From the IMG/VR virus record IMGVR_UViG_3300034117_001582, positions 227,868-291,867 of that record: 64,000 nucleotides of DNA; one strand, given 5' to 3'. The notes under the pieces are model-generated. The model was not told the origin of the DNA, searched no databases, and worked only from the letters and a program-made list of their open reading frames with translations. The position numbers and the translations under genes were made by a program. This document shows positions 352 through 61,758 of this stretch, one piece after another. The stretch's first letter is position 1, and each line of letters opens with the position of its first letter.

Positions 352-426
352 AATACATTTTTATTATAAATACCACATGAACCAAAAAATAAGGATATTC
401 CCATGTAAAAGATTTTTATATAAAAC

Positions 427-840
427 TTATTTTTTTTGTTTGGGTACGCTAATACAGGATATCACTTTACCCTCACATTCCATATACTTCACAACCTCAA
501 CACCTGGAGGTATATTACCTGAAACGGTTGTTGTGGTTGTATTTCCTACCGTTACTGTAGATGAATTACCTTGTGCCATTAACCAGTTTCTTTCGGCATC
601 ATATTGGGCATACCTAAAAGCATCATACCCATAACCTTCACCTTTTATGGTGTTTGGTGGACAAGTAAATGTTTTTTCAACTTCACAACCAAATTTAACT
701 TGTTCAAATTCACCATCTTCCAAACGATTAAATAACTTATCAAAAAATTTACGGACCTTTTTTTTAAATCCACGTTCATTTTGTTCATATAATCCCATTA
801 TATGTTTTTTCTCTTCTTCGCTGATAATAAACTTATTCAT
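427..840 (-). CDS. Leader-E protein (MNKFIISEEEKKHIMGLYEQNE), Cys-containing cargo
   Basis: ORF track; TATTTAT at 852-862; upstream terminator. Confidence 0.85.
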   Translation of the reverse strand: MNKFIISEEEKKHIMGLYEQNERGFKKKVRKFFDKLFNRLEDGEFEQVKFGCEVEKTFTCPPNTIKGEGYGYDAFRYAQYDAERNWLMAQGNSSTVTVGNTTTTTVSGNIPPGVEVVKYMECEGKVISCISVPKQKK

Positions 841-868
841 ATTAATGATTTATAAATAAATACCATAT

Positions 869-903
869 AAAACAAAAAACCCCCTCCGTATAAGGAAAGG
901 GTT
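869..903 (-). terminator. Intrinsic terminator of the repeated cassette type
   Basis: C-run/G-run imperfect hairpin followed on minus strand by TTTTTTGTTTT. Confidence 0.75.
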
Positions 904-924
904 CACATATTAATATAAAATTAT

Positions 925-1155
925 TTACATACCATCTCTAAATCGAGATTCAGCGCCACGTCTTACTTTTCTAGACGATGTCATTTCATCAGCAATGTTT
1001 CTTAAAATACTAACGGTTTCTTCGTGACTAGAATTTGAGTTTCTTATAACATCCATAATATCGGAGTATAAAGTATTTTTTTCCATGTCCTCACTAACTA
1101 TACGTTTAACTAATCTTGTTAAATCTCTTTCTGTAAGTCTAATTATTTTTTTCAT
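925..1155 (-). CDS. Leader-A small protein (MKKIIRLTERDLTRLVKRIVSED)
   Basis: Start reassigned to ATG 1155; TATTTAT at 1160-1166 lies inside the longer track ORF. Confidence 0.85.
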   Translation of the reverse strand: MKKIIRLTERDLTRLVKRIVSEDMEKNTLYSDIMDVIRNSNSSHEETVSILRNIADEMTSSRKVRRGAESRFRDGM

Positions 1156-1172
1156 ATTAATAAATATCACAT

Positions 1173-1210
1173 AAAACAAAAAACCCCACCTTAATTAGAG
1201 AATGGGGGGT
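1173..1210 (-). terminator. Cassette terminator
   Basis: aaaacaaaaaaccccacc...atggggggt; 20-mer aaaaaaccccaccttaatta identical at 1178, 2303, 2829. Confidence 0.75.
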
Positions 1211-1212
1211 GA

Positions 1213-1305
1213 TTAACTTTTTCCGTGATAATCAAAATAATCTTTTCTGTCCTTAAGTACCGTTGCAATCACGAACGAAATACTTAATATACTAAATATT
1301 GCCAT
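1213..1305 (-). CDS. 30-aa hydrophobic peptide MAIFSILSISFVIATVLKDRKDYFDYHGKS
   Basis: Manual translation; TTGACT-N17-TATATA promoter-like site upstream (1312-1340); terminator downstream. Confidence 0.5.
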   Translation of the reverse strand: MAIFSILSISFVIATVLKDRKDYFDYHGKS

Positions 1306-1382
1306 ATACAATATATACTAAAAATTCATTCAATAGTCAATTATCGTAGGTTATGAAATAGTTAAGTTTAAACACCTAAAAC

Positions 1383-1820
1383 TTAATGAGTCGTTCTCTT
1401 TATCTTTTTATTCTTTTTCACATTAAAGTTATATCTTTTATCGTGAGAAGGACCCTTTTCATACCAAAACTCAATACAGTCAATATCAAGACCAGTTTTT
1501 TCATTAACATAAGAAAGAACGGTTTTAGAAAATAGTTTTTTTCTTGTTGCAACTTTTGGTATAAAATTATCTATTTCTTCTCCGGTCTCAGAATTAACAT
1601 ACATATCTTGTTTACACCCCTCACCTTTACCACCAACAGTATAAACTGTAAATATCGCATCACCGTATCCAATCGACTCATTTTCAAACGGATTACTATC
1701 ATTTGGATATATTCTTATCCTATCGGATTCTCTTTCATATGAAAGTTTTGGCCCATACAATACGTCCAACAAATTAAATACAATTTTCTGATACTGTGAT
1801 TTTGTTATGATTACGTCCAT
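1383..1820 (-). CDS. Leader-D-variant protein, paralog of 1869..2279
   Basis: MDVIITKSQYQKIVFNLLD; shares KKLFSxTxLSYVNEKTxLDIDCI with neighbour. Confidence 0.85.
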   Translation of the reverse strand: MDVIITKSQYQKIVFNLLDVLYGPKLSYERESDRIRIYPNDSNPFENESIGYGDAIFTVYTVGGKGEGCKQDMYVNSETGEEIDNFIPKVATRKKLFSKTVLSYVNEKTGLDIDCIEFWYEKGPSHDKRYNFNVKKNKKIKRTTH

Positions 1821-1868
1821 ATAAGATAAATATACAAGAAATAAAAACCACTACGAATATAGGGGGAC

Positions 1869-2279
1869 TTACTTAGTTGTTGTCTTTTTATTTTTTTTAA
1901 CGTTAAACCTATATCTATTTTCGAAATAAGTTTCATCATTATTATATATTTCATAAGGAAAATCAATACAGTCAATATCAAGATTTGTTTTTTCATTAAC
2001 ATAAGAAAGAATGGTTCTAGAAAATAGTTTTTTTCTTAATACCGCTGGTGGTAAATACCTTTCAATTTCCTCAATTGTTTGAGAAAGAACTAACATATCT
2101 CTTTTACATCCTTTAGATTTTCCCTGTTTTGTATAAACTCTAAAAATTTCTTCACCATGATCTGATAAAATCTCAAATATCTCCTCATCTTTTTTAACTG
2201 AAATATTTGGGCCATATAATGTGTCCAACAAATTAAAAACAATTTTCTGATATTGTGATACTGTTATAACAATTTTCAT
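1869..2279 (-). CDS. Leader-D-variant protein, paralog of 1383..1820
   Basis: MKIVITVSQYQKIVFNLLD; identical 17-nt start/promoter block catataagataaatata at 1818, 2277, 4752. Confidence 0.85.
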   Translation of the reverse strand: MKIVITVSQYQKIVFNLLDTLYGPNISVKKDEEIFEILSDHGEEIFRVYTKQGKSKGCKRDMLVLSQTIEEIERYLPPAVLRKKLFSRTILSYVNEKTNLDIDCIDFPYEIYNNDETYFENRYRFNVKKNKKTTTK

Positions 2280-2297
2280 ATAAGATAAATATAATGG

Positions 2298-2336
2298 AAA
2301 ACAAAAAACCCCACCTTAATTAAAAGATGGGGGTTT
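2298..2336 (-). terminator. Cassette terminator
   Basis: cccca..tggggg hairpin + T-tract on minus strand. Confidence 0.75.
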
Positions 2337-2358
2337 CTAAATTTATTATTTATATTTT

Positions 2359-2793
2359 TTAATGACCAGATTGTGAACCTCCATGGTCGTAACGTTCACG
2401 TGGGTCCTGTGAATATTGTGGGTCATACTTACTTGGTTTGCCGTAACTTGTATATTTTGATGTTTGATTGTCATCAACCATTTTCATTGCATCATTAGGA
2501 TTCATACCGTAATCGGCATAAATTAATCCTTTACCTTTTCTTTTTAAATCTCTCAATGATTCTTCATCACCTCTACAATATCTAATGATGATAACCTTGT
2601 TTCCGTCTTCATCTTCTTCAATATCAACATGACCTTTATTATCTTCTTCATCCATATATTCTTCTGATGAGTCACAATCAACGGCTTTTATATCAAATGT
2701 AAAATCCTCATTTGAATTTTCTTCCATTTCCATAATAGTTCTTTTAACAATTCTTGTTAAATCTCTTTCAGTTAATCTTATAATTCTTGCCAT
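2359..2793 (-). CDS. Leader-A protein, acidic cargo
   Basis: MARIIRLTERDLTRIVKRTIMEMEE; TATTTAT 2811-2817. Confidence 0.88.
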   Translation of the reverse strand: MARIIRLTERDLTRIVKRTIMEMEENSNEDFTFDIKAVDCDSSEEYMDEEDNKGHVDIEEDEDGNKVIIIRYCRGDEESLRDLKRKGKGLIYADYGMNPNDAMKMVDDNQTSKYTSYGKPSKYDPQYSQDPRERYDHGGSQSGH

Positions 2794-2828
2794 AATATTT
2801 TAATTTATTAATAAATACTTTGATATTC

Positions 2829-2864
2829 AAAAAACCCCACCTTAATTAAAAGATAGGGATTTTT
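2829..2864 (-). terminator. Cassette terminator
   Basis: Near copy of 2298-2336. Confidence 0.7.
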
Positions 2865-3164
2865 TTAGGATTTTAATTTATCCAAAACTTGAATAAGTTG
2901 GTCAGCTCGTTTGTCAGTGTGACTTCTAGAATCTTGGTGGACTTCCTCAATACGTCTATGGATATGTTCCAAAGTGATATCCAATTCACGTCTTTGGTCA
3001 TCCAATCTTCTTTGGGAGTATTCCATTTCCCGCAAATAAGACAATTCCAATTCTTTTAAATCTTTTTTTGTTCTAACAACCATAACTAACCCCCAAACAA
3101 GAGCAACAATAAAAATTATTGCAATAATCGAAAGGATACCTAAAGTAAAATAAAATGTTTCCAT
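2865..3164 (-). CDS. Single N-terminal TM helix + coiled-coil protein (no leader)
   Basis: METFYFTLGILSIIAIIFIVALVWGLVMVV then heptad-rich region; start reassigned to 3164. Confidence 0.75.
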   Translation of the reverse strand: METFYFTLGILSIIAIIFIVALVWGLVMVVRTKKDLKELELSYLREMEYSQRRLDDQRRELDITLEHIHRRIEEVHQDSRSHTDKRADQLIQVLDKLKS

Positions 3165-3230
3165 TAATTTAAGATTTTGTTGTTTATACCTCAAGGGTAT
3201 ATAAAGTATAATGAAAACATATTAAAAATA

Positions 3231-3260
3231 AATAAAAAACCCCTCTTTGTTGGGAGGGGA
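3231..3260 (-). terminator. Cassette terminator
   Basis: cccctc..gagggg hairpin + T-tract. Confidence 0.7.
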
Positions 3261-3289
3261 ATCATTTTAAATTTATCAAAATAATTGTT

Positions 3290-3727
3290 TTAGTGATTTT
3301 CTCCTGATAAGTACTTAGGATTTGGATATACTATCTTCTTATTATATAATTTATTCTTATCTTCATCGGATAACTTTGGGGTCTTGTCTTTGGATTTGGA
3401 TGCAAGTAGTGAAACAAGTGGTTCTAATGGTGTTAAAGGCACAGGAGATTTAATGAGCAAACAATTTAATACTTTTGTTACTTCTTTTAGATTATTGTAG
3501 GTCAACATATTTCCAATAGCATTTAGACATTCTTTACTTATTAAATCTCCAGTACCCATAGTACCAGACAAAGTCTTTTTAGGTTTTGTGTCACAAGATT
3601 TTGGTATACTTAGAGTTGTTTTACTAAAACAGCCACCGACCATTGATGTGGTGTCTTCCTCTTCTTTAAGAACTCTTCTTACAATACGTGATAAATCTCT
3701 TTCTGTTAATCTAACTATTCTTGCCAT
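3290..3727 (-). CDS. Leader-A protein, Cys-containing cargo
   Basis: MARIVRLTERDLSRIVRRVLKEEE; TATTTAT 3744-3750. Confidence 0.88.
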   Translation of the reverse strand: MARIVRLTERDLSRIVRRVLKEEEDTTSMVGGCFSKTTLSIPKSCDTKPKKTLSGTMGTGDLISKECLNAIGNMLTYNNLKEVTKVLNCLLIKSPVPLTPLEPLVSLLASKSKDKTPKLSDEDKNKLYNKKIVYPNPKYLSGENH

Positions 3728-3756
3728 AATATTTTAATTTATTATAAATACTTCGT

Positions 3757-3788
3757 AAAACAAAAAACCCCTCTGTTGGGAGGGGGAG
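3757..3788 (-). terminator. Cassette terminator
   Basis: cccctc tgttgg gagggg + T-tract. Confidence 0.75.
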
Positions 3789-3807
3789 TATTTTAATTTT
3801 TTTAAAA

Positions 3808-4254
3808 TTATAGATATGCTTTTATATGATTTCTTTTTAACCAACTTCTAACTTGTTCCTCTGTTTGACCTTTTTGTATTTTTGATAATACATGTTTACG
3901 GTCACCATTACCTAGTATTTCACCGGTTTTTGGAACATATTTTATCATGAGATACCCGTCCATTGGTTTTTTTAATTGAATCTCTATGCCGGTTTTAGCA
4001 GTTACGGTAACCTCTTGATATGTTTGTAACTTTGCATACCTATCGGTACCATCGTCTTTACAAGGAATTTCTTTATAATTATTATCAATACAACTGTCAG
4101 GATCTCCATACCTATCGGTATCATTGCCCTTACAAGCTATTCTATTACCTTTAAAATCAATACAGAATCCTTCTTCATCCGCAGTATTTTCATTAATTAT
4201 TCGTTTAACAATTCTTGCTAAATCAGATTCAGTTAATCTTATAATTCTTGCCAT
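3808..4254 (-). CDS. Leader-A protein with short internal repeat (CxxxxxxxxxC..D.TDRY twice)
   Basis: MARIIRLTESDLARIVKRIINE; TATTTAT 4270-4276. Confidence 0.88.
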   Translation of the reverse strand: MARIIRLTESDLARIVKRIINENTADEEGFCIDFKGNRIACKGNDTDRYGDPDSCIDNNYKEIPCKDDGTDRYAKLQTYQEVTVTAKTGIEIQLKKPMDGYLMIKYVPKTGEILGNGDRKHVLSKIQKGQTEEQVRSWLKRNHIKAYL

Positions 4255-4349
4255 AATTTATATTTTATTATAAATACATCATAAAACAAAAAAGGAAGGG
4301 GGCGGGGGGATGGTTCAATGTAAAAAATTTTTCCAGAAAATTAGCCGTG

Positions 4350-4754
4350 TTATAAATACAATTTTATTATATCAATAGGGTCCAACCCTATTTCACTAAT
4401 ATTAAATAGTTTGTTTAAACGGTCTCCCGTTAATGAGGAAGTTGCTCCAAGTTCATTATCTATTTCTATATCATAAAATATTTCCAAAGCAAATCCACCA
4501 TTGCGTTCGCTATCCACAAATAAAAAAGTTCTATCCTTAAATTTAATAAGATACAAAGGACCAAATGGTTTTACCTGAGACCTAAACCACCAACGGGTTA
4601 CCAAATCACGAACATTAGTTGGCATATCATCATACGTCTCAATAAGTTTAACTTCCAATTCAAAATCAAACTCATATTTCAAAAACTTTTTAAACTTATC
4701 GGTTTTTGATTCAAACAATAAGTTATACTGGTCTTCAGTTATAATGATTTTCAT
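4350..4754 (-). CDS. Leader-D protein (MKIIITEDQYNLLFES)
   Basis: Start reassigned to 4754; TATTTAT 4760-4766. Confidence 0.85.
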   Translation of the reverse strand: MKIIITEDQYNLLFESKTDKFKKFLKYEFDFELEVKLIETYDDMPTNVRDLVTRWWFRSQVKPFGPLYLIKFKDRTFLFVDSERNGGFALEIFYDIEIDNELGATSSLTGDRLNKLFNISEIGLDPIDIIKLYL

Positions 4755-4770
4755 ATAAGATAAATATAAG

Positions 4771-4804
4771 GAAACAAAAAACCCCACTGATGAGGTGGGG
4801 AATT
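4771..4804 (-). terminator. Cassette terminator
   Basis: ccccac tgatgag gtgggg + T-tract. Confidence 0.8.
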
Positions 4805-4826
4805 ATTTTACATATTATAAGGATTA

Positions 4827-5432
4827 CTAATCAAGTTCTGAACCCCATGATTTAATTATATTATTAATTGGTTTTTTGTGCCATTTTCTATAAATGTCAA
4901 TACTATCTTTAACATCTTCCATCATATCACCATTAAATCTTTGTTTATATAGGGTTACAACTTCATTATATTTTTTCCAACATTCAGGACAGTTTCCTTC
5001 TTTTTTTAAAGGTTTTGACATATTTAAAAATGCTGCTTCAATAGGGGCTTCCGCATTCCCATCAGTTATAAACTCAGGAGCGGAGTAATCTTTAGGTACC
5101 ATCTTTTTTCCAAATTCTTGTTGAATCAAGACCGCTAATGAGTGACTTTTCTGTAATGATGCGTAAATTAAATCGGCAAGTTCTTTTGTTGTCATTGAAT
5201 TTTCAATATAGTTATAATCAAGTTCTCCACCTTCAATAACGTCCCTATACAAATTTTTAATTTTTTGAATAAAGGATGGTTCATTTTGTTCAGAAATTAA
5301 AGGTTTAACATCTCCCAATGTTGATTCCATTAATTGTTTAAACCTTGAAGTATCAACCGACATACCCCCATTATGTTGTTCACGAATACTATTCTTTTCT
5401 TCGTCTGATAAATTATTTAATAAATGTTTCAT
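4827..5432 (-). CDS. Leader-E protein (MKHLLNNLSDEEKNSIREQH...QLMESTLGDVKPLISEQ)
   Basis: ORF track; TATTTAT 5451-5457. Confidence 0.85.
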   Translation of the reverse strand: MKHLLNNLSDEEKNSIREQHNGGMSVDTSRFKQLMESTLGDVKPLISEQNEPSFIQKIKNLYRDVIEGGELDYNYIENSMTTKELADLIYASLQKSHSLAVLIQQEFGKKMVPKDYSAPEFITDGNAEAPIEAAFLNMSKPLKKEGNCPECWKKYNEVVTLYKQRFNGDMMEDVKDSIDIYRKWHKKPINNIIKSWGSELD

Positions 5433-5463
5433 AATATATTTGTTTTATTTATAAATACCACAT

Positions 5464-5498
5464 AAAACAAAAACCCCCACTCGTTGGAATAGGGGTTT
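5464..5498 (-). terminator. Cassette terminator
   Basis: aacccc..ggggtt hairpin + T-tract. Confidence 0.75.
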
Positions 5499-5518
5499 AA
5501 TAATTTGACCGATATGAA

Positions 5519-5878
5519 TTAATATTTAGGTTCTCTACCACACGTTAGTTTATAGTAGTAAATTATAAAATCAAGTTTCTCATTAATTAGATATTCCCTT
5601 ATTGATAAATCCAATGAATTACCATCAGATTCAAATTCAGATTTAATCTGTTCATTATGTAAATATAACCTTAAAAACAATCTTTCCATTACATGATTAA
5701 AGTATGTTTTTAGTTTTAAATATTTACAAATTTTCATATCAGACAATATCCCTATTAACAATTCAGTTATATCAATCCCCCTTCTTCTGAAATATGTGTC
5801 ACTTATTGTTGATTCAGATATTACCTGTTTAACGATTCTTGTAATATCTGATTCCGTAAGTCTTATAGTTTTTTTCAT
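5519..5878 (-). CDS. Leader-A protein (MKKTIRLTESDITRIVKQVISE)
   Basis: Start reassigned to 5878; TATTTAT 5885-5891. Confidence 0.85.
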   Translation of the reverse strand: MKKTIRLTESDITRIVKQVISESTISDTYFRRRGIDITELLIGILSDMKICKYLKLKTYFNHVMERLFLRLYLHNEQIKSEFESDGNSLDLSIREYLINEKLDFIIYYYKLTCGREPKY

Positions 5879-5898
5879 ATAATGATAAATATATGGGG

Positions 5899-5930
5899 AA
5901 ATAAAAAACCCCACTAGTTGGAATGGGGGG
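5899..5930 (-). terminator. Cassette terminator
   Basis: acccca..tggggt hairpin + T-tract. Confidence 0.75.
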
Positions 5931-5934
5931 TATC

Positions 5935-6309
5935 TTATCTTTTATTCCATTTGGATTTTAATTTGGACTTGTATTTTTTTGGGATGTACTCAAATAAAAA
6001 CTCTTTCACCCTCTTTCTATATTTTTCATCTACCTGTTTAAAATAAAACCCCGAACCTCTAAGTAACTTAAATGTGATTAATCCCCCCATTTGTTCTAAA
6101 AAATGGTCTTCATTTTTAAAACCATTAGTATCTATGTCATCAATAGTTTTATTAACAACATTTAATATGTGGTCATTTAATGAAGTATCTTTTTTATTAT
6201 AGAATCTTTCTAAATCCGATATCTTTTTTATTTCATCACTTTCTTCAGTTATAACTCGTCTAACCATTTCTATAAGTTCTGATTCTGTAAGTCTAATTAC
6301 TTTTTTCAT
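5935..6309 (-). CDS. Leader-A protein (MKKVIRLTESELIEMVRRVITEE)
   Basis: ORF track; TATTTAT 6327-6333. Confidence 0.88.
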   Translation of the reverse strand: MKKVIRLTESELIEMVRRVITEESDEIKKISDLERFYNKKDTSLNDHILNVVNKTIDDIDTNGFKNEDHFLEQMGGLITFKLLRGSGFYFKQVDEKYRKRVKEFLFEYIPKKYKSKLKSKWNKR

Positions 6310-6641
6310 AGTATTATTGTTTAAATATAAATACCCCTATTTTCCTAAAATTTTTCTGGAATTTTTTTTTAACATATAGGGGGTATTCCGACTTTTAAAG
6401 AATTTTTACCAAAATATTTTTTAAGACCATATACCCTTTTTTATAACCCATACTCTGCAAGAGGGATTGACCCCCCTTTTGACCCCTGACATTGTGTCAG
6501 AAAGAGGGAGGATACGGGGGAGGGGGCCCCCATTAAATGAGGGGAGGGGGGTATGCCAAAGATATGAGGGGGGTAGACATAGGGGATGTTAGTTATCAAC
6601 ATAATGTTCATAAAGATATATGAAATAAATGTGGGGGATTG

Positions 6642-6673
6642 TTTGGCAGTATCAATAACATTCACTATCTTTG
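6642..6673 (+). promoter_or_regulatory. Bacteroidota sigma70-type promoter
   Basis: TTTG (6642-45) N20 TATCTTTG (6666-73), exact -33/-7 consensus. Confidence 0.75.
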
Positions 6674-6755
6674 TATAGACAATGTGAGAGAGATGTCGGG
6701 CTGAGGGAACAACACCCTTTGGAGTGTAGACTCCAACCTGCCTTTATAATATATA

Positions 6756-6968
6756 ATGGGACTTATAAATAATTATGTTAGACCCCCTTGTCATATGAGA
6801 TATTATACTTATCTTTGTTATATGATTTTTATATACATAACACTTATCTCGGTCATCCTTATTGTTGGGGTATCTATTATGATTCTTAAGTGTTCCCCAT
6901 CTTCTAAGGTGTCCTCGTTTATTCGTAGACATATCATTACTGATGAAGACCTTGAACCATTGGACTAA
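6756..6968 (+). CDS. Small membrane protein (start uncertain)
   Basis: One strong hydrophobic stretch; downstream of + promoter; converges on 6965..7282. Confidence 0.5.
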   Translation: MGLINNYVRPPCHMRYYTYLCYMIFIYITLISVILIVGVSIMILKCSPSSKVSSFIRRHIITDEDLEPLD

Positions 6969-7282
6969 TCCCCATAGAACTCTTCCATCTTTTGTATTCC
7001 CATGTTTACTATTGTAGTTCTTATATCATGGTAGTCATCCTCAGATAAATTATAGTATTGATTTAAAAACTGTAATACATCTGACATGTGGGCATCAACT
7101 ATTACAAATTGTCTTTTACTTACAATTGGTTTCTTACTCCATCCCTTCTTAGCAAATTCAAAATAGATTACACCATCATCGGTTAATCCCTCCTTATGTT
7201 TGAATATACATTTAATCCCCTTACTATCCTCAGTAATCATTGGGGAGTATTGTTCTATGATAAATTTTTCTATTACGTTCAT
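6965..7282 (-). CDS. Hypothetical protein
   Basis: 105-aa ORF; TATTTAT 7301-7307. Confidence 0.75.
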   Translation of the reverse strand: MNVIEKFIIEQYSPMITEDSKGIKCIFKHKEGLTDDGVIYFEFAKKGWSKKPIVSKRQFVIVDAHMSDVLQFLNQYYNLSEDDYHDIRTTIVNMGIQKMEEFYGD

Positions 7283-8050
7283 AACTATACATTAAGGTTA
7301 ATAAATATATTCCATAATGTGAATAACAAATGGGGATGACAGTATGTCAGGAGGGAATTGTTGATAACTATTTATGTTAATTTATTTGATTTTGTCAAAA
7401 TGTCAGTCAGCGAACACGAACGGGACAATCCCTTTTCCCACTTTATCCCACATCTTCTTACCACTATTTACCACCACAATTCCCTCTGTTGCTATAGTGA
7501 GACTAATAAATCCCCTCTATCAGTACCGCCATAAAGGTTTTTTTAGGTATACAGATTTTCCAGCTAAAAATTGTATTAATACTGTAGAGGCGGCCGAGAC
7601 GTAGTCTTATAGTTCTTCCAACGTATAGGGAACCGAAAATATCCCCTTCAACGTGTCATTAAGTCATATCACCAACGTTTAAGACCTCTATAGTTTAGTG
7701 GTAATATGTGGGACAATTAGTCATATCATATAAATCAGGTTTCACCTGACCACAGTGATATATAACATCAGTCCCTCTAATAAGTTCTATGTATATTATT
7801 CCCTTATACATAACGAAGTTATTCTATATATGAATTACTTTAAAGAACACCATATACCACATGTGAATGTCTACCACTATTATGGGGAGAGGTCGAAGAC
7901 CGATTAAATGGGGGGAACTATCAGGTAAACTTTCTATACCTGAGAACCTCATCATGTAAAAGAACTATACATTATCTTATCGTAATGTGGATTACTGTAA
8001 TGACCATTACATTACTGTTTAAGATATGTCCCATTAATTACCACATATCC

Positions 8051-8110
8051 TTTATACAAAGGTAACGATTACTCTTGTTTTTTATACGAAGGTAAAGATT
8101 ACTCTCGTTA
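8051..8110. repeat. Tandem 30-bp direct repeat, each copy holding a minus-strand TACCTT(T/C)G promoter-like element
   Basis: tttatacaaaggtaacgattactcttgttt / tttatacgaaggtaaagattactctcgtta, 26/30 identical. Confidence 0.75.
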
Positions 8111-8236
8111 AGAGTATAGGATAAATTTATGAGGTGAATTCCGTAGTGATAACGGAGGACTATGAACCGAATGAATTAATCGTATAGTCTAACTTACTTT
8201 CCCTATAATGTAGAGGATTAGTTATTTTATACATTA

Positions 8237-9358: not shown

Positions 9359-9375
9359 ATTAATAAATATATCAT

Positions 9376-12920: not shown

Positions 12921-12935
12921 AATGATAAATACTTT

Positions 12936-21988: not shown

Positions 21989-22046
21989 AGTTATAAATAT
22001 CGCTTAATTATTTTGCGTCATCAATAGTTTATCGTATCTTTATGTT

Positions 22047-23093: not shown

Positions 23094-23175
23094 AATAATA
23101 AATATCACCTATTTTATTTATGAGGTAAAGAGCGTTTTGATATCATTACAATATGAGAAAATTATAATATAAAAT

Positions 23176-23962: not shown

Positions 23963-23992
23963 CAAAGATAGTAATAAAACGGTAATTGCAAA
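23963..23992 (-). promoter_or_regulatory. Bacteroidota sigma70-type (early) promoter
   Basis: TTTG-N18-TATCTTTG. Confidence 0.75.
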
Positions 23993-24806: not shown

Positions 24807-24838
24807 CAAAGATATGTAATTGGTTACAAACTTCCAAA
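24807..24838 (-). promoter_or_regulatory. Bacteroidota sigma70-type (early) promoter
   Basis: TTTG-N20-TATCTTTG; -7 elements also upstream of minus genes at 31268, 34555, 38813, 39063, 43713, 45199, 47552, 50968. Confidence 0.8.
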
Positions 24839-26213: not shown

Positions 26214-26252
26214 ATTAAATAAATATGTCTTAAGACATAAAACAATACTTTA

Positions 26253-27534: not shown

Positions 27535-27600
27535 AGTGAATAAAATATAATTTACAAATTTATAAATGTCAAATAATTTACGACTTTTTGAACTTATCTT

Positions 27601-30905: not shown

Positions 30906-30924
30906 AAACTATAAATAGTTTAAA

Positions 30925-31228: not shown

Positions 31229-31319
31229 AATTTCTTTTGTTTATTTTTTAAGTGATTAATACTGATACAAATATATAAAACTTATTTCTATAATTCAAAA
31301 CTTTTATGAATTATTTTTA

Positions 31320-34396: not shown

Positions 34397-34408
34397 TAAT
34401 TATAAATA

Positions 34409-34549: not shown

Positions 34550-34584
34550 AATTACAAATATACAAAAAGTTTTTTAATTAATAA

Positions 34585-36104: not shown

Positions 36105-36120
36105 TATTTATTAATAAATA
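36105..36120. promoter_or_regulatory. Perfect 16-bp palindrome giving TATTTAT on both strands between divergent genes
   Basis: tatttattaataaata equals its own reverse complement. Confidence 0.7.
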
Positions 36121-38731: not shown

Positions 38732-38835
38732 TTAAAGTGTTTTCCGTGTTTACCCCATATCCCAATACATAGGATTAAAACAATAAACAATATGGTCATA
38801 ATTAACATAACACAAAGATAAGTAAAAGAATTAAA

Positions 38836-39582: not shown

Positions 39583-39650
39583 ATTCTATAAATATAAAAT
39601 CCCCACTTTTTTCAAAATGAGGACTTTTATATAGTTTGCGGAACTAAAAA

Positions 39651-40232
39651 TTATTTTCTATCCATTCTTGATTTGTCGGCGGCCTTGTAGTGAAAACCGG
39701 TTTTATACTTATCATATCCACCTCTTTTAAAGAACGCAGAGTCTTTTAAAGTCACACCCAACAAAGAAACAATACCAGCAACAAGAGCGGCTCCACCACC
39801 AATAAACATCGCGGCCGGCACAATTCCTAAACCAGCTATCAAACTAGTATTTTGAACAATTTTATCTAAAATTCCTCTTAATTTCATTTCAGTTTCACTC
39901 ATTCCGTATTGTTTTTCAAAATCCTCATACATCATTTCGTCAACTTCTGAATAATTAGCATCTTCCTCTTCCATTTGTGATACCACATCCATCAACATGT
40001 CTTCTAATTCATCTTTACCTTTACGTTTCATTAAATCACTAAGGAATCTCATTTCAGATGGTGAAATAGTATGTTGTAGTTCTTCTTTAGCGGTTTCTAA
40101 ATCCATTTTAGAAAAATCCGATTCCCCTTCCATTTCTTGGGAGTCTGCCATCCATTGTTCTTCATCTTCTTTGATAATTCTTTTTACCAAATTAATAAGT
40201 TCGGATTCTGTTAGTCTTATAGTTCTTTTCAT
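39651..40232 (-). CDS. Leader-A protein, acidic with C-terminal hydrophobic hairpin
   Basis: MKRTIRLTESELINLVKRIIKE; LIAGLGIVPAAMFIGGGAALVAGIVSLLGV. Confidence 0.87.
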   Translation of the reverse strand: MKRTIRLTESELINLVKRIIKEDEEQWMADSQEMEGESDFSKMDLETAKEELQHTISPSEMRFLSDLMKRKGKDELEDMLMDVVSQMEEEDANYSEVDEMMYEDFEKQYGMSETEMKLRGILDKIVQNTSLIAGLGIVPAAMFIGGGAALVAGIVSLLGVTLKDSAFFKRGGYDKYKTGFHYKAADKSRMDRK

Positions 40233-40258
40233 TTTTTTATAGTTTTATTATAAATACT

Positions 40259-41176
40259 TTATAGTTTTAAAATATCTCCAATTTTTACAAAATCATCATT
40301 AAATTCTTCCATTCGCATTCTATCTTCATAATCGTAGTCATCAATATCATTATAATTAGTGATAATTAATTCATATGAAAATGCGCTATCGTTAGCATTT
40401 AATTCTTCAAATTTTTCTAAAGTCATTTCGGTGTCTTCAAACTTTTTAATTTTTGAACCTAGCACAACAATACTCATATAATTTATATTAAAATAGTCTT
40501 CGGTAGATTCTTCTTGTCCACTACCATCACAATTTGAACATTGAACATCACCATCTCCACCACAATCACTACAGGATAAAGTTTGTGATCCGTCACATTC
40601 ATTACATTCATAATTACCCTCTCCACTACAATTTGAGCAAGCTTCTTTACCCGAACCATCACAACTTGAACATTCAACTTCTATCTCTTCACCTTCATCG
40701 TCATAATCAGTTTCTTCACCAGAACCATCACAATTTGAGCAATCTTCTTTACCCGAACCATCACATTCGTAACAATCTTCTTTACCCGAACCATCACAAC
40801 TTGGGCATTCAACTTGTCCATCTCCATCACATTCGTAACATCCCTCTTGACCTCCACCATCACAGTATGAACAATCCATGGTTTTTTTGGTTAACTCAGT
40901 AAAAATTTGAATTTGATATTCATAAAGATTACTAATAATTTTTACTAAACCGTCTGTTGGTATTTTTGGGTTTCTAATCATAAAGTAAGTAGCAAAAATA
41001 GTTTTTGTTCTTTCTCTATGTGTGTTTAGTTTAGAAAATAAAACATTAACCAAATGGTCATTGTCTGAAATACGTTTTAGATTGTTTAACGTTTTTATAC
41101 CCATACCTTCACTTTCAATATAATTTTTGAAAGTTTTAGCAATTGATAATATTTTTCTTATCTCTTCTTGATTCAT
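40259..41176 (-). CDS. Protein with ten CxxCxGx(G) repeats (DnaJ-type Zn finger array), no J-domain
   Basis: 11-aa period; no HPD; start reassigned to 41176. Confidence 0.85.
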   Translation of the reverse strand: MNQEEIRKILSIAKTFKNYIESEGMGIKTLNNLKRISDNDHLVNVLFSKLNTHRERTKTIFATYFMIRNPKIPTDGLVKIISNLYEYQIQIFTELTKKTMDCSYCDGGGQEGCYECDGDGQVECPSCDGSGKEDCYECDGSGKEDCSNCDGSGEETDYDDEGEEIEVECSSCDGSGKEACSNCSGEGNYECNECDGSQTLSCSDCGGDGDVQCSNCDGSGQEESTEDYFNINYMSIVVLGSKIKKFEDTEMTLEKFEELNANDSAFSYELIITNYNDIDDYDYEDRMRMEEFNDDFVKIGDILKL

Positions 41177-41192
41177 ATAAATAAATATATTA

Positions 41193-43708: not shown

Positions 43709-43732
43709 ATCACAAATATATTAATTATTTTT

Positions 43733-45194: not shown

Positions 45195-45226
45195 AATACA
45201 AATATAATAAATAAATTTAGATTAAA

Positions 45227-46471: not shown

Positions 46472-46497
46472 ATTTATAAATATATTGAAGTTATGGT

Positions 46498-47547: not shown

Positions 47548-47588
47548 AGTACAAATATAATAAACAATTTGATAATATTTATCAATAT

Positions 47589-50037: not shown

Positions 50038-50270
50038 ATTAAAAATAAATAAATAAAGTTATTTACTCACTTGAAGAATCTTTTAAGAAACCCCCATATT
50101 CCATGGGCCGGTCGAGACGTACATAAATATAGAAGTACCACAAAACAATTAAAGGTAATTGCGTTATAGATGAATATTTATGGTGTTTTAATTATTATTT
50201 AGAATATATCTTTATCGAATACTATTTAAACCCAAAAACAATAACCCCAATCGAAGGTCAATTGGGATTA

Positions 50271-50963: not shown

Positions 50964-51037
50964 AATACAAATATAATCATTTTTTTAATTTTAATAAAAT
51001 ATATTTTAATAATTTGTATTTTAATTTGTAAAACATC

Positions 51038-54252: not shown

Positions 54253-54279
54253 AACGTTTAGTTTTATAAATAAATAGTC

Positions 54280-59054: not shown

Positions 59055-59099
59055 AATGTGTAAAGTATTTTTCTAATAATATGTAAAGTGGATTTTTTA

Positions 59100-59381
59100 T
59101 TATCCCTCTACTTCTTCGTCTTTATCTTTGTTTTTACCAGCAAAGTATTTATCAACAGACGCAATACCAAATGAACCTAAAGTTATCCATAAAAACCCAT
59201 CATAGATAAATTGATTTATTGGCATTTCTTGTCCGTGTAATCCCGTCCATATATCAACACCAAGACAAATAACCATCATGATAAATGACCCAAAACCTAC
59301 TATCGATTTTTCATTAATGTCGTTATGATCCATAAACATTCTTACTAAGAATGATTTCTTTTTTGTTTTCTTTTCTACCAT
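59100..59381 (-). CDS. Two-TM membrane protein, holin-like
   Basis: Two TM helices, charged C-terminus. Confidence 0.55.
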   Translation of the reverse strand: MVEKKTKKKSFLVRMFMDHNDINEKSIVGFGSFIMMVICLGVDIWTGLHGQEMPINQFIYDGFLWITLGSFGIASVDKYFAGKNKDKDEEVEG

Positions 59382-59418
59382 TTTAATTTTAATTTTAATT
59401 GTTTATTTTAATTGTTTA

Positions 59419-59751
59419 TTACCAAGATTCTTCCTCTTTTTTAGGTTGAGGTTGAACCGGTTGGGGATTAGATGCGGGTTTCTCAATAACTCTTTCATGA
59501 ATTACTGTATTACCCCCATTGTTTTCAGTTTTTTGTTTATTTTCTTGGTTTTGTTCCACATTAATAGTGATTGGTGCTTGACCTCCACTTTGTTCTGTTT
59601 TAGTTTCTTCTTTTGGTTCTTCATGACTACCAAATAATGTAACACCTAACCATGTACCCCCACCAGCAATTACTGTTGTTAATGTACCAATAATTGTTTT
59701 TTTCAAACCTGACCATGTTCCGTCATTGGTCTCTTGTGCTTCTTCTGACAT
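59419..59751 (-). CDS. Single-TM protein with polar tail
   Basis: IIGTLTTVIAGGGTWLGVTLFG. Confidence 0.75.
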   Translation of the reverse strand: MSEEAQETNDGTWSGLKKTIIGTLTTVIAGGGTWLGVTLFGSHEEPKEETKTEQSGGQAPITINVEQNQENKQKTENNGGNTVIHERVIEKPASNPQPVQPQPKKEEESW

Positions 59752-59772
59752 TTTTTGTTTTTATTTATTTGT

Positions 59773-61683
59773 TTATTGTTTTACTATTCTTTCAAATGAT
59801 GGAACACCATTTTCTACAGTAAGTTTAACTATATATACACCAGGAGCTAATTGTCCTAAATCTTTAGTGTAGTTATAAACTCCGTTAGGAATTTGTGTAT
59901 CCAAAATTGTAACTAACTTTCTACCCACAATATCATAAATTGATAACGTAGCGTTTGTAGTTTCTTCAACTTTAAAAGTGATGTTAACCTCATCTTGATA
60001 TGGGTTAGGATAAACTTCCATGTTGTTACCATTTAGAATTTTTCCACCTTCCATCTTTAATACTTGAAGGATTCCATTTGTAGGAGTTAAAGTTAAATCT
60101 TTAGATAATGTATTTCCTGCAAATTTTCTTGTAGTATATAATGGACTTGCTTCCCATAAGTTTTGTGGTTGTAACGCCAAGAATTGTAATGTAACTACTT
60201 GGTCACCATCTTTTAATGTGTTCGTATTATTTGTTGGGTCAAATCCACCCCAATCAATTTCATTATCATTTGGGTTAACATATGTAATCCATTTCATAGC
60301 ACCTGCCGAAGAAATTATCCCTTTAAATTCTAATAATGTGTCATCATATATAAAACCAAATTGTAATGAACTTAACTCTACCCCGTTAGTATTAACTTTA
60401 ACGGGAAGTTCAACCAAGTTTCCAGCTTGTACTGAAATGTGTGGTACGTTTACCTCAATAGATTGTGTAGGGAAATCGTATTCAACTTTAGTGTCGATAA
60501 CATTATAGATTTGATTCTCTAAACCAGGTGCCGGTCCAACAACCACTTCAATAGGTGTAACACGAGCCATATGATAACCTGTACCATTTGCGTCACCCGG
60601 TACCATTACATAATAAACAACTGAATCAGGTTGACCCGGTAATATATTAAATGTAAAGTTGGTGACTCCACCAATTGTTGATGTGTAGTTAGTTGCCGAT
60701 CCGTTAATTGTTGTGTATTCTGATGATGTAAAGAATTTAACATCTTTAGTGTTGTTAGGCCACTGAGTAAATCTACCTGACACTCTACCAAACACACCCC
60801 ATACGTCAGATATTGTTGTACCATATGATCCATTAACATCTGCAGTATAGTAGTTAAATCCTGTCATAGTACCGTTGCCCAATACCCACTGATTGATTAA
60901 TTGAGCATCTGTTGATGAGATAACATTACCCACACCCATACTATCACCTTGAACCGCTAAACGAACATCCCAAAAAGTAGTATCCAATGGAACTGAAATT
61001 GCAAAATCTCCGTCGTTATCTGTTATATATGTAGAGTGTTGTGTCCAAGTATTACTACCTAATGGTTTCTTTTCTAAAGCTAAAGTTAAAGTTTTTGCTC
61101 CCGTACCGGTTACGTTTGTAAATGTTCCGTGATACGCAAAGTTTACAGGTGTAAACACACCACCATAGTTATGAACACTTAAAGTAGTATCCATACCATC
61201 TTGTTTTGCGGCATATGGTGTGAAAGTTTGAGCTCCTGTCCATGTTAAGTTACTTATGGATGCTAAGTTGTTGAAAGTAGCCGCAGGTGCATGAGTAAAT
61301 GTAATTAAGAATTTTTCACCATTTGGTACTGTGTACGCCGCACTTGGTCCTGTGTAACTTAAAGTAACGGTAATATAACCATTCACAGTATTTGTTATAT
61401 ACTGAAGGTCTAAGTTGGTTGATGATCCGATTAATGTTACGGCAGCATTTGTAAATGCAATATTATCGTAAAACACTCGGAATTGAACCCCCGCAAATTT
61501 TGTAAGGGTTGTATTTTGTAATGTGATTTTTGCTTGGGTCGTTCCCTGAGCAGTAGTTCCTACTTGATATTGTGATGCGATGATACCCCACAAACCATTA
61601 GATGGTGCTGCGGGTACCTGTGCAAAAACGAATAAAGGAGATAAAAGAACTAAGGTTAATAGTAATTTAAATAGAATAGACAT
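59773..61683 (-). CDS. T9SS type-A cargo: signal peptide + cohesin-like + dockerin-like + cohesin-like + CTD
   Basis: VYPNP..D.VNI.F...ATLSIYDIVGRKL...LAPGVYIVKL (Por CTD); VQAGNLVELPVKV...SSLQFGFIYDD..L; ADVNGSYGTTISD. Confidence 0.88.
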   Translation of the reverse strand: MSILFKLLLTLVLLSPLFVFAQVPAAPSNGLWGIIASQYQVGTTAQGTTQAKITLQNTTLTKFAGVQFRVFYDNIAFTNAAVTLIGSSTNLDLQYITNTVNGYITVTLSYTGPSAAYTVPNGEKFLITFTHAPAATFNNLASISNLTWTGAQTFTPYAAKQDGMDTTLSVHNYGGVFTPVNFAYHGTFTNVTGTGAKTLTLALEKKPLGSNTWTQHSTYITDNDGDFAISVPLDTTFWDVRLAVQGDSMGVGNVISSTDAQLINQWVLGNGTMTGFNYYTADVNGSYGTTISDVWGVFGRVSGRFTQWPNNTKDVKFFTSSEYTTINGSATNYTSTIGGVTNFTFNILPGQPDSVVYYVMVPGDANGTGYHMARVTPIEVVVGPAPGLENQIYNVIDTKVEYDFPTQSIEVNVPHISVQAGNLVELPVKVNTNGVELSSLQFGFIYDDTLLEFKGIISSAGAMKWITYVNPNDNEIDWGGFDPTNNTNTLKDGDQVVTLQFLALQPQNLWEASPLYTTRKFAGNTLSKDLTLTPTNGILQVLKMEGGKILNGNNMEVYPNPYQDEVNITFKVEETTNATLSIYDIVGRKLVTILDTQIPNGVYNYTKDLGQLAPGVYIVKLTVENGVPSFERIVKQ

Positions 61684-61758
61684 TTTTTTATTTTTTAGGT
61701 TTAATTGATATAAATAAATATATCTTAAAACCCAAACTGAATAAAAAAATTCAATTTT

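What the first reader, a model, noticed from the sequence alone, without database searches (positions are those of the whole stretch)
366..61715. Two promoter classes split the genes: sense-strand TATTTAT (leader and secreted genes) versus host TAnnTTTG (metabolic and RNA-repair genes)
Seen: TATTTAT lies about 4-25 nt upstream of the ATG of about 30 operon-leading genes and flips with gene strand (plus-strand copies at 36105 and 47576). It is the reverse complement of the T4 late promoter TATAAATA. TA(T/C)(A/C)TTTG, several with TTTG 18-20 nt upstream, precedes non-leader genes (23963, 24807, 31268, 34555, 38813, 43713, 45199, 47552, 50968). Caveat: an all-AT 7-mer is common by chance here; the evidence is positional and orientation enrichment. 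Inference: a phage-specific late promoter, consistent with leader proteins being virion components.
Basis: partly seen in the sequence, partly recalled or inferred. Interest (0 to 1): 0.62.

Follow-up and report, generated by a model that had tools for sequence, protein, structure and literature searches.

The report
Two promoter classes in jumbo phage
A 292-kb uncultivated freshwater phage of Bacteroidota marks over 100 of its genes with its own strict signal, TATTTAT, and about 30 probably early genes with the normal host promoter, and about a third of both signals sit where the messenger RNA would begin at the start codon.

Summary
In the window's intergenic gaps TATTTAT occurs 41 times in gene orientation and 10 times against it, where about 8 are expected. 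Genome-wide it is the top upstream 7-mer (117 versus 50; 33-fold over coding), and all seven bases are needed. It is also the top upstream 7-mer in two whole relatives and in 80 related metagenomic loci. Orthologous genes keep their promoter class. All nine listed TAnnTTTG sites are correct; these are canonical Bacteroidota sigma-A promoters, with TTTG 19-20 nt upstream.

TATTTAT is very probably a phage-specific, single-element, -10-like promoter. It is not late-specific. It precedes DNA polymerase B, DnaB helicase and ribonucleotide reductase, as well as major head, portal, sheath, tail fibre and lysozyme genes. It is also not a T4 late promoter in orientation.

The genome has no phage RNA polymerase that I could detect. 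It has two sigma-like genes: one RpoD-like, and one divergent whose N-terminal domain folds like T4 gp55 or ECF sigma region 2. Which one reads TATTTAT is unresolved.

Both motifs end exactly 4-5 nt before the ATG in about 30% of cases and almost never 7-10 nt before it. That spacing implies many leaderless mRNAs. No transcription start sites were measured.

The parts
366..7307 (-). Fifteen TATTTAT sites, one or two in front of each of 14 small genes: 366, 852/856, 1160, 1826, 2285, 2811, 3228, 3744, 4270, 4760, 5451, 5885, 6327 and 7301. Eight of them lie 6-18 nt after an intrinsic-terminator hairpin and its T-tract.
   Evidence: Terminator-like sites in 1-20000: 23 found against 6.9 +/- 2.9 expected. 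All eight minus-strand terminators in 1-6 kb are followed by TATTTAT.
9363..9369 (-). TATTTAT 4 nt before the ATG at 9358 of a 373-aa ORF. A second copy lies at 9374-9380.
12925..12931 (-). TATTTAT 4 nt before the ATG at 12920 (355-aa ORF).
21993..21999 (-). TATTTAT 4 nt before the ATG at 21988 (214-aa ORF).
23098..23104 (-). TATTTAT 4 nt before the ATG at 23093.
23963..23970 (-). Host-type -7 box TATCTTTG, 26 nt before the ATG of a 242-aa gene. TTTG lies 18 nt upstream of the box.
24807..24814 (-). Host-type -7 box TATCTTTG before the DUF932 gene 24028-24780.
26219..26225 (-). TATTTAT 5 nt before the ATG of a 452-aa ORF. This ORF is absent from a relative.
27241..27247 (-). TATTTAT 14 nt before the GIY-YIG endonuclease gene 26558-27226.
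27555..27562 (-). Host-type box TAAATTTG, 20 nt before the gene 27277-27534.
30911..30917 (-). TATTTAT 5 nt before the lysozyme+LysM gene 29982-30905, directly after a terminator hairpin.
31268..31275 (-). Host-type box TATATTTG before the gene 30977-31228.
34402..34408 (-). TATTTAT 5 nt before the ATG at 34396.
34555..34562 (-). Host-type box TATATTTG, 5 nt before the ATG at 34549.
36105..36120 (.). Divergent pair of TATTTAT sites: 36105-36111 (+) for gene 36140-36739, and 36114-36120 (-) for gene 35719-36084.
38813..38820 (-). Host-type box TATCTTTG with an ATG 4 nt downstream, upstream of the HAD_SAK_2 RNA-repair gene 38150-38731.
39588..41187 (-). TATTTAT sites at 39588, 40250 and 41177/41181, before the genes 39079-39582, 39651-40232 and 40259-41200.
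43713..43720 (-). Host-type box TATATTTG exactly 4 nt before the ATG of the cREC_REC gene. It heads the operon that holds RNA ligase 41893-43011.
45199..45213 (-). Host-type box TATATTTG (45199-45206), 4 nt before a GTG start, abutted by TATTTAT at 45207-45213.
46476..46482 (-). TATTTAT 4 nt before the ATG of a 414-aa ORF.
47552..47582 (.). Divergent gap. Host-type box TATATTTG (47552-47559, -) lies 4 nt before the AAA_33 kinase gene. TATTTAT (47576-47582, +) lies 6 nt before gene 47589-48152.
50045..50055 (-). Overlapping double heptamer TATTTATTTAT before a 622-aa ORF.
50968..50975 (-). Host-type box TATATTTG 4 nt before the metallophosphoesterase gene 50271-50963.
54266..54276 (-). Double heptamer TATTTATTTAT before gene 53968-54252.
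61710..61720 (-). Double heptamer TATTTATTTAT, 26-30 nt before the cohesin + T9SS-sorting-domain gene 59773-61683.

Best explanation
**Context.** The window is the last 64 kb of a 292-kb jumbo myophage of a freshwater Bacteroidota host. Its genes are transcribed from two promoter classes, both read by the host core RNA polymerase.

**Class P2: TTTG-N19-20-TA(T)(A/C)TTTG(T).**
- This is the ordinary Bacteroidota sigma-A -33/-7 promoter, so unmodified host holoenzyme can use it at once.
- About 30 units carry it. They cluster at the two ends of the record.
- They include an RNA-repair set, small unknown genes and the operon of an RpoD-like phage sigma.

**Class P1: the invariant heptamer TATTTAT.**
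- Extended form: A/T only at -16 and -15, not-T at -1, and A-rich 5-6 nt after the box.
- It is a single-element, -10-like promoter with no -33/-35 partner.
- I infer that it is read by host core polymerase carrying a phage-encoded sigma. The candidates are the RpoD-like protein at genome 41958-42773 and the divergent gp55/ECF-like protein at genome 143373-144128.
- It heads over 100 units that cover replication, virion, lysis and many small monocistronic genes. It therefore marks the phage's own (post-early) programme, not the late genes alone.

**Start site and leaders.** In both classes I infer a start 4-5 nt after the box. Where the ATG sits exactly there (about 30% of sites) the mRNA is leaderless. 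Otherwise the leader is usually about 7-15 nt, and leaders of 2-5 nt are avoided.

**Shown:** motif statistics, orientation, spacing, conservation, gene content and the presence of the sigma genes. **Inferred:** promoter activity, the start site, the sigma-promoter pairing and the timing.
For: **Enrichment and orientation.**. All seven positions are needed: no single-mismatch variant shows a sense bias.

**Anatomy.**
- Twelve or so consecutive small genes at 85-6309 mostly follow a terminator hairpin, and TATTTAT is the only motif found in every one of these gaps between hairpin and ATG. Something must start transcription there.
- The heptamer ends 4-5 nt before the ATG in 31 of 110 sites in G000, 28 of 101 in G001 and 12 of 88 in G002. 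None ends at 1-3 nt and almost none at 7-10 nt. A second peak lies at 11-19 nt.
- The P2 box shows the same rule: 4 nt in 8 of 35, 7 of 32 and 4 of 24 sites.
- In Flavobacterium johnsoniae the G of TAnnTTTG is at -5 and the start site is 4-5 nt after the box (PMC6847099).

**Conservation.**
- TATTTAT is the top sense 7-mer in the upstream gaps of two whole relatives, whose median protein identity to this genome is 64% and 52%.
- It is also the top sense 7-mer in 80 loci from other metagenomes, and 79 of those 80 have more sense than antisense copies.
- Reciprocal-best orthologues keep their class: 40 P1-P1 and 7 P2-P2 against 1 swap. Fisher p = 8e-26 for P1 and 1e-8 for P2.
- The flanks of orthologous sites are only about 40-55% identical.

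**Polymerases and sigmas.**
- Sigma70_r2 + r4 + r1.2 protein, E = 4e-17.
- Second sigma-like protein: a weak region-2 hit (E = 0.013). Its model matches only sigma factors. Z = 10.0 to T4 gp55 (7d7c_F; 107 residues, rmsd 3.7 A) and Z = 9.7 to sigma-E region 2 (4lup_C; 93 residues, rmsd 2.5 A).
- No beta or beta' domains and no T7-like polymerase were found.
- E. coli-type -35/-10 matches are not enriched: 116 found against 125 expected.
- TATTTAT is not among the six sigma motifs mapped in F. psychrophilum (PMC9723704).

**Host phylum.** No Shine-Dalgarno signal and an A-rich start context. The phage also encodes a T9SS sorting domain and SprB repeats.
Against: - No transcription start site was measured. 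The two metatranscriptome runs that hold relatives are kept only as contigs and show no 5' ends.
- The sigma-promoter pairing is unproven. An RpoD-like sigma with an intact region 4 would normally use a -35 element, and none is seen at P1.
- The second sigma-like model has middling confidence (pLDDT 66), and its Z scores lie in the range the tool warns about for helical proteins.
- In 13 of 45 relatives the nearest motif upstream of the RpoD-like sigma operon is P1, not P2. Early expression of that sigma is therefore not universal by this crude test.
- A 20-kb operon (genome 124070-144128) has neither motif.
- Two giant proteins (2431 and 2148 aa) have no family match, so an unrecognised phage polymerase is not excluded.
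- Gene calls and start codons come from my own simple caller, and some starts were mis-trimmed.
Confidence: 0.62

Rival explanations
1. TATTTAT is a T4-type late promoter. A gp55-like sigma reads it only after DNA replication, and it drives virion genes.
For: It is a single AT-rich box without a -35 element. The genome encodes a protein whose N-terminal domain superposes on T4 gp55 (Z = 10.0). Head, portal, sheath, tail-fibre and lysozyme genes lie behind TATTTAT.
Against: - The sense-strand sequence is TATTTAT(A), the reverse complement of TATAAATA. TATAAATA in gene orientation is the minority form, 23 versus 53.
- TATTTAT also directly precedes DNA polymerase B, DnaB helicase and an SF2 helicase, and it is the nearest upstream promoter of ribonucleotide reductase.
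- It is the nearest upstream promoter of 233 of 344 genes.
- No gp45-type clamp was detected.
Confidence: 0.1
2. TATTTAT is read by host RNA polymerase whose own sigma-A has been re-aimed by a small phage protein, as in AsiA/MotA-type sigma appropriation, or by a host alternative sigma. No phage sigma is involved.
For: The box sits in the same place relative to the ATG as the host -7 box. It shares the leading TA and T5/T7 with TAnnTTTG. Most small early genes have no known function.
Against: - Two sigma-like genes are conserved across the whole phage group. The second is 64-88% identical in more than 500 contigs, which is above the median protein identity.
- None of the six mapped F. psychrophilum sigma motifs is TATTTAT.
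- No TTTG partner is seen at -33.
Confidence: 0.15
3. TATTTAT is not a promoter. It acts on the RNA or on translation: a processing site, or an AT-rich enhancer of Shine-Dalgarno-less initiation.
For: It lies close to start codons (4-19 nt). Bacteroidota initiation depends on A/U-rich upstream sequence (PMC6847099).
Against: - The terminator-flanked monocistronic cassettes need a promoter, and TATTTAT is the only motif common to these gaps.
- The spacing rule (4-5 nt or at least 11 nt, never 1-3 nt, rarely 7-10 nt) is the same as for the proven -7 promoter box. It fits a start-site-setting element better than a ribosome contact.
- Sites up to 60-85 nt from the ATG exist, for example at DNA polymerase B.
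- The start-codon context of genes inside operons lacks the motif.
Confidence: 0.06
4. TATTTAT is the promoter of an unrecognised phage-encoded RNA polymerase, for example a crAss-like giant single-chain enzyme hidden in one of the unannotated giant proteins.
For: Two adjacent proteins of 2431 and 2148 aa have no Pfam or PHROG match. Some Bacteroidota phages carry very divergent polymerases (from my own knowledge; not checked here).
Against: No beta or beta' domain was found. No DxDGD-type metal motif occurs in the giant proteins. Two sigma-like genes imply use of a sigma-dependent (host) core enzyme.
Confidence: 0.05

Closest known systems
Bacteroidota sigma-A (sigma-ABfr) -33/-7 promoter, TTTG / TAnnTTTG
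   Same: Class P2 has the TA..TTTG box, mostly TAT(A/C)TTTGT. TTTG has its G 20-21 nt before the box in 41 of 79 sites, and an A follows 4 nt after the G. This geometry matches the mapped F. johnsoniae promoters.
   Different: About 30% of the phage's P2 sites put the ATG exactly at the predicted start site. Leaderless mRNAs are about 5.5% in F. psychrophilum, and 87% of F. johnsoniae leaders exceed 10 nt. Class P1 (TATTTAT) lacks the TTTG, the G and the -33 element.
T4 late promoter TATAAATA, read by gp55 with gp33 and the gp45 clamp
   Same: Class P1 is a strict, short, AT-rich, single-element box near -10 with no -35 partner. It is used by host core polymerase, and the phage encodes a protein with a gp55-like sigma region-2 fold.
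   Different: The sequence is the reverse complement and so lies on the other strand. P1 is not restricted to late genes. No gp45-type clamp was found. The sigma-like protein is 251 aa with an extra C-terminal helical domain.
Phage sigma cascades, such as Bacillus phage SPO1 gp28 then gp33/34, and RpoD-like sigmas of other large phages
   Same: Host-type early promoters are combined with phage-encoded sigma factors and a phage-specific promoter consensus for the remaining genes. The RpoD-like sigma here lies two genes downstream of a host-type promoter.
   Different: Only one phage-specific consensus could be found although there are two sigma-like genes. It has no -35 element. The setting is Bacteroidota, with many promoters placed for leaderless mRNAs.
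phiKZ/AR9-type jumbo phages with their own multisubunit RNA polymerases
   Same: Jumbo genome size, and short AT-rich phage-specific promoter motifs.
   Different: No beta or beta' homologues were detected. Sigma-like genes are present instead.

Membership tests
Bacteroidota sigma-A -33/-7 promoter (class P2) | -7 box TAnnTTTG in gene orientation upstream of genes | tested here: met
   37 sense versus 16 antisense in the gaps. The strict form TAT[AC]TTTG is 27 versus 7 against 4.4 expected. All nine listed window sites were verified.
Bacteroidota sigma-A -33/-7 promoter (class P2) | -33 element TTTG about 19-21 nt upstream of the box | tested here: met
   The G of (T)TTG lies at -21/-20 relative to the box start in 41 of 79 sites from three genomes.
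Bacteroidota sigma-A -33/-7 promoter (class P2) | Transcription starts 4-5 nt after the G and depends on host sigma-A | not testable with these tools
   Only indirect evidence: A is at the 5th nt after the G in 70% of sites, and the ATG lies at spacing 4 in 8 of 35 sites.
T4-type late promoter (class P1) | TATAAATA on the non-template (sense) strand at -10 | tested here: not met
   The sense strand reads TATTTAT(A). TATAAATA in gene orientation occurs 23 times, against 53 for its complement.
T4-type late promoter (class P1) | No -35 element | tested here: met
   No positional signal at -45 to -17 in 276 sites. The only signals are an A/T requirement at -16/-15 and the terminator T-tracts.
T4-type late promoter (class P1) | A gp55-family sigma is encoded | tested here: inconclusive
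   A 251-aa protein has a weak Sigma70_r2 hit (E = 0.013). Its model (pLDDT 66) matches gp55 at Z = 10.0 and other region-2 domains at Z 8-10. It has no Pfam, PHROG or PDB sequence match.
T4-type late promoter (class P1) | Restricted to late (virion and lysis) genes | tested here: not met
   It also precedes DNA polymerase B, DnaB, an SF2 helicase and ribonucleotide reductase.
T4-type late promoter (class P1) | gp45-type sliding clamp as activator | tested here: not met
   PF09116 gave only a 14.9-bit hit inside the SbcC-like ORF. gp33 was not searched for.
Canonical sigma-70 -35/-10 promoter | TTGACA-N16-18-TATAAT enriched upstream of genes | tested here: not met
   116 matches against 125.3 +/- 11.2 in shuffles.
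Jumbo-phage multisubunit RNA polymerase system | Phage-encoded beta/beta'-like subunits | tested here: not met
   PF00562 and PF00623 found no candidate at E <= 1, while the controls rang in 14 of 14 genomes. Very divergent homologues could still be missed.

The most novel reading that the evidence does not exclude
An abundant, uncultivated group of freshwater Bacteroidota jumbo phages runs most of its genome from one strict heptamer promoter, read by a phage sigma of a previously unannotated family. The candidate is the 251-aa gp55/ECF-like protein, which has over 8000 'hypothetical' homologue clusters. Both this promoter and the host-type promoters are positioned so that roughly a third of transcription units give leaderless mRNAs. 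That is about six times the host's rate, which would suggest that leaderless initiation is a deliberate phage strategy in a phylum that lacks Shine-Dalgarno pairing.
Probability: 0.35. Interest if true: 0.65.

Novelty: new member of a known kind. Interest (0 to 1): 0.5.

Why it matters
- Promoters of Bacteroidota phages are almost unknown, and these phages are very common in lake metagenomes. More than 500 viral contigs carry the conserved sigma-like gene.
- A seven-base signal that marks more than 100 transcription units gives a simple way to delimit operons in these genomes. It also separates probable early genes, which have host promoters, from the rest, and it offers orthogonal promoter/sigma pairs for Flavobacterium genetics.
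- The exact 4-5-nt spacing makes a clear prediction of widespread leaderless mRNAs, which can be tested by 5'-end sequencing.
- The result corrects the 'late promoter' label. It also points to an unannotated sigma-like protein family.

Tried and rejected
**Searches that found nothing useful**
- Close cultured relatives: megablast and tblastn against GenBank phages found none.
- PHROGs: 17 of the 20 large window proteins searched had no match.
- A third promoter motif among the gaps that lack P1 and P2: none was evident.
- Subclasses of TATTTAT separating replication genes from virion genes: none was seen by eye.
- Phage RNA polymerases: PF00562, PF00623 and PF00940 gave nothing, though the PF00940 control was silent. 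A DxDGD regex found nothing in the giant proteins.
- Literature: no paper links TATTTAT to a phage promoter.

**Analyses that were dropped or misled**
- Footprinting upstream of the sigma operon by bulk alignment: gene content differs too much between relatives. It did show that the TATTTAT overlapping the start of the DUF6576 gene there is not conserved, so I discounted it as chance.
- Orthologues of the 452-aa window ORF: only identical copies were found.

**Tests that could not discriminate**
- RNA evidence: two freshwater metatranscriptomes hold relatives only as contigs. These give no start sites, and one contig spans several genes, so DNA carry-over or read-through cannot be excluded.
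- Pairing each sigma with a promoter class through more distant relatives: the 80 best loci that were kept are at least 64% identical, so there is no contrast.

Two scripts timed out before the statistics ran.

Full report
**What the sequence is**

The window is the last 64 kb of a 291,867-bp IMG/VR virus record that CheckV rates 99% complete. It has about 30% G+C, and nearly all its genes lie on the minus strand. The genome encodes a major head protein, a portal, a tail sheath and a 2919-aa collagen-like tail fibre, so it is a jumbo myophage.

Several features point to a Bacteroidota host:
- Start codons have no Shine-Dalgarno signal. Their context is A-rich, with A at -3 and at -11 to -13.
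- One phage protein carries a type IX secretion sorting domain, and another has SprB repeats.
- The host-type promoter boxes described below are of the Bacteroidota kind.

Relatives are found in freshwater metatranscriptomes. No cultured relative is in GenBank phages.

**Checking the observation**

I called 344 genes with a simple codon-bias caller. I then analysed the non-coding gap upstream of each gene, read in the gene's own orientation.

- TATTTAT is the commonest 7-mer in these gaps: 117 sense against 50 antisense in 14.9 kb. Coding sequence holds only 70 copies in 271 kb.
- A 2nd-order Markov model trained on the gaps themselves expects 23.6 +/- 4.3 genome-wide. For the window it expects 8.3 +/- 2.4, where 41 sense and 10 antisense copies are seen. 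In gaps between same-strand genes the counts are 86 against 19.
- No single-mismatch variant is sense-biased, so all seven bases matter.

**Anatomy of the two classes**

Class P2 is mostly TAT(A/C)TTTGT. In 41 of 79 sites from three genomes, (T)TTG lies with its G 20-21 nt before the box, and an A follows at the fifth base after the box's final G. This is the Bacteroidota sigma-A -33/-7 promoter. In F. johnsoniae the box occupies -12 to -5 and the start site lies 4-5 nt after it (PMC6847099).

Class P1 has no upstream partner. The extra constraints are:
- A/T only at -16 and -15;
- rarely T at -1;
- about 70% A at the fifth and sixth bases after the box.

Eight minus-strand terminator hairpins at 1-6 kb are each followed by TATTTAT, 14-18 nt after the stem in seven cases and 6 nt in one, and then by a small gene. 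Terminator-like sites are enriched there: 23 found against 6.9 expected. In these cassettes TATTTAT is the only motif found in every gap between terminator and ATG.

E. coli-type -35/-10 matches are not enriched.

**The spacing rule**

The gap between the end of the box and the ATG is sharply bimodal for both classes.

| Class | Genome | Sites at the short spacing | Other spacings |
|---|---|---|---|
| P1 (4-5 nt) | G000 | 31 of 110 | none at 1-3 nt, almost none at 7-10 nt, second peak at 11-19 nt |
| P1 (4-5 nt) | G001 | 28 of 101 | same pattern |
| P1 (4-5 nt) | G002 | 12 of 88 | same pattern |
| P2 (4 nt) | G000 | 8 of 35 | none at 0-3 nt, only one at 6-12 nt |
| P2 (4 nt) | G001 | 7 of 32 | same pattern |
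| P2 (4 nt) | G002 | 4 of 24 | same pattern |

- In 80 further related loci the P1 peaks lie at 4-6 nt (124 sites) and 13-15 nt (86 sites).
- The P2 box is known to set the start 4-5 nt downstream, so an ATG at that spacing means a leaderless mRNA. P1 obeys the same rule. That is what a start-site-setting element would do, and it argues against a translational enhancer.
- Leaderless mRNAs are about 5.5% in F. psychrophilum (PMC9723704). In F. johnsoniae 87% of leaders exceed 10 nt. The phage's share of about 30% is therefore unusual.
- My start-codon refinement mis-trimmed some genes. The ORFs starting at 9358 and 12920, for example, really have spacing 4. The leaderless share is thus, if anything, underestimated.

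**Conservation**

- Forty-five IMG/VR loci carry orthologues of the phage's RpoD-like sigma at 70-100% identity.
- I fetched two whole relatives: G001 (281 kb) and G002 (297 kb). Their median protein identity to this genome is 64% and 52%.
- In both, TATTTAT is again the top sense 7-mer upstream of genes: 101 against 46, and 88 against 40.
- Reciprocal-best orthologues keep their class. Against G001 there are 40 P1-P1 pairs, 7 P2-P2 pairs and 1 swap. Fisher p is 8e-26 for P1 and 1e-8 for P2. Against G002 there are 21 P1-P1 pairs and 3 P2-P2 pairs, with no swap.
- Around orthologous sites the flanks are only about 40-55% identical. The exceptions are the same extra positions seen in the site logo.

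**Which genes carry which class**

P2 sites cluster at the two ends of the record, at 0-45 kb and 202-284 kb. In the window they head:
- a DUF932 gene;
- a HAD_SAK_2 gene;
- the cREC_REC and RNA-ligase operon;
- an AAA_33 kinase plus metallophosphoesterase pair;
- a second metallophosphoesterase.

This is an RNA-repair and takeover set, and it fits early expression.

P1 directly heads 106 genes and is the nearest upstream promoter of 233 of the 344 genes. In the window those genes include:
- the small-protein family at 85-6309;
- lysozyme+LysM;
- a GIY-YIG endonuclease;
- a DnaJ-type zinc-finger protein;
- the cohesin and T9SS-domain protein.

Elsewhere P1 heads, or is the nearest promoter upstream of, the tail sheath, the major-head operon, the portal and the tail fibre. 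It equally precedes DNA polymerase B, DnaB helicase, an SF2 helicase and ribonucleotide reductase. P1 is therefore not a late-only signal.

**What could read P1**

- No beta or beta' domains and no T7-like polymerase were found. The T7-family control search was silent, so that result is weak.
- The genome encodes a 271-aa sigma with regions 1.2, 2 and 4 at genome 41958-42773. It matches primary and stationary-phase sigmas in the PDB at E of about 1e-44 to 1e-36. It keeps the aromatic melting residues and differs at several region-2.4 positions; that reading of the alignment is my own.
- This sigma lies two genes downstream of a P2 box. In 45 relatives the nearest upstream motif is P2 in 18, both in 3, P1 in 13 and none in 11.
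- A second protein, 251 aa at genome 143373-144128, gives a weak Sigma70_r2 hit (E = 0.013). It has no Pfam, PHROG or PDB sequence match.
- This second protein is highly conserved: 64-88% identical in more than 500 viral contigs, and over 8000 clusters of unnamed homologues.
- Its AlphaFold model (pLDDT 66) matches only sigma factors. Examples are T4 gp55 (Z = 10.0; 107 residues, rmsd 3.7 A), sigma-E region 2 (Z = 9.7; 93 residues, rmsd 2.5 A), and SigH, SigB and sigma-E over the full length (Z = 10-11). The tool warns that such Z values can arise for helical proteins, so I treat this protein as probable, not proven.
- No gp45-type clamp and no further ECF region 4 were detected.

**Conclusion**

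The best reading is a two-tier programme. Host sigma-A promoters serve an early set of genes. A phage-specific single-box promoter, read through a phage sigma, serves the rest. Both are placed so that many transcripts start at the AUG.

Promoter activity, the start site, the timing and the sigma-promoter pairing are all inferred. The sequence likeness to the T4 late promoter is on the wrong strand, and I regard it as coincidental. The functional analogy (one strict AT-rich box and a region-2-type sigma) is reasonable.

Noticed in passing
window 85-6309 (-): About a dozen tandem monocistronic cassettes (terminator, TATTTAT, small ORF of 76-201 aa). Seven of the ORFs share the N-terminal motif (I/L)(I/V)RLTE(R/S)(D/E)L..(I/M/L)V(K/R)R and are otherwise unrelated.
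   Followed up: partly
window 59773-61683 (-): A phage-encoded 636-aa protein with a cohesin domain and a type IX secretion C-terminal sorting domain. The host's T9SS would presumably export it.
   Followed up: partly
window 38150-38731, 41893-43708, 46498-47547, 50271-50963 (-): An RNA-repair set, all behind host-type promoters. It comprises HAD_SAK_2, RNA ligase with a PHA02142 OB domain, cREC_REC, an AAA_33 kinase and two metallophosphoesterases. It is plausibly a counter to tRNA-cutting host defences.
   Followed up: partly
window 852-862, 41177-41187, 50045-50055, 54266-54276, 61710-61720 (-): The overlapping double heptamer TATTTATTTAT occurs five times in gene orientation, where roughly one is expected. 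It may give two starts 4 nt apart or a stronger promoter.
   Followed up: no
window 24847-26243 and 26544-27263: A metatranscriptome contig from a relative about 97% identical (34 mismatches over about 1,090 aligned bases) skips both stretches. It therefore lacks the 452-aa ORF and the GIY-YIG endonuclease ORF. Both look like insertions that bring their own TATTTAT.
   Followed up: partly
genome C1:124070-144128 (+), loci L012 and L013: About 28 tightly packed plus-strand genes, from glycosyltransferases to the second sigma-like gene, have neither TATTTAT nor TAnnTTTG upstream. Their promoter is unexplained.
   Followed up: partly
genome C1:143373-144128 (+), L005:1312-2067: A 251-aa protein with a sigma region-2-like fold and over 8000 unnamed homologue clusters in metagenomes. 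It looks like an unannotated phage sigma family.
   Followed up: partly
genome C1:90039-104087 (-): Two adjacent giant ORFs (2431 and 2148 aa) near the tail genes have no Pfam or PHROG match.
   Followed up: partly
genome C1:9500-12000 (-): tRNA-like sequences lie in the early region among host-type promoters. I saw them in the gap listing and did not scan them with ARAGORN.
   Followed up: no
window 62573-63724 (-): The thymidylate synthase is 383 aa. The Pfam match spans residues 6-308 but covers only 233 profile positions, so the protein carries insertions or an extension.
   Followed up: no
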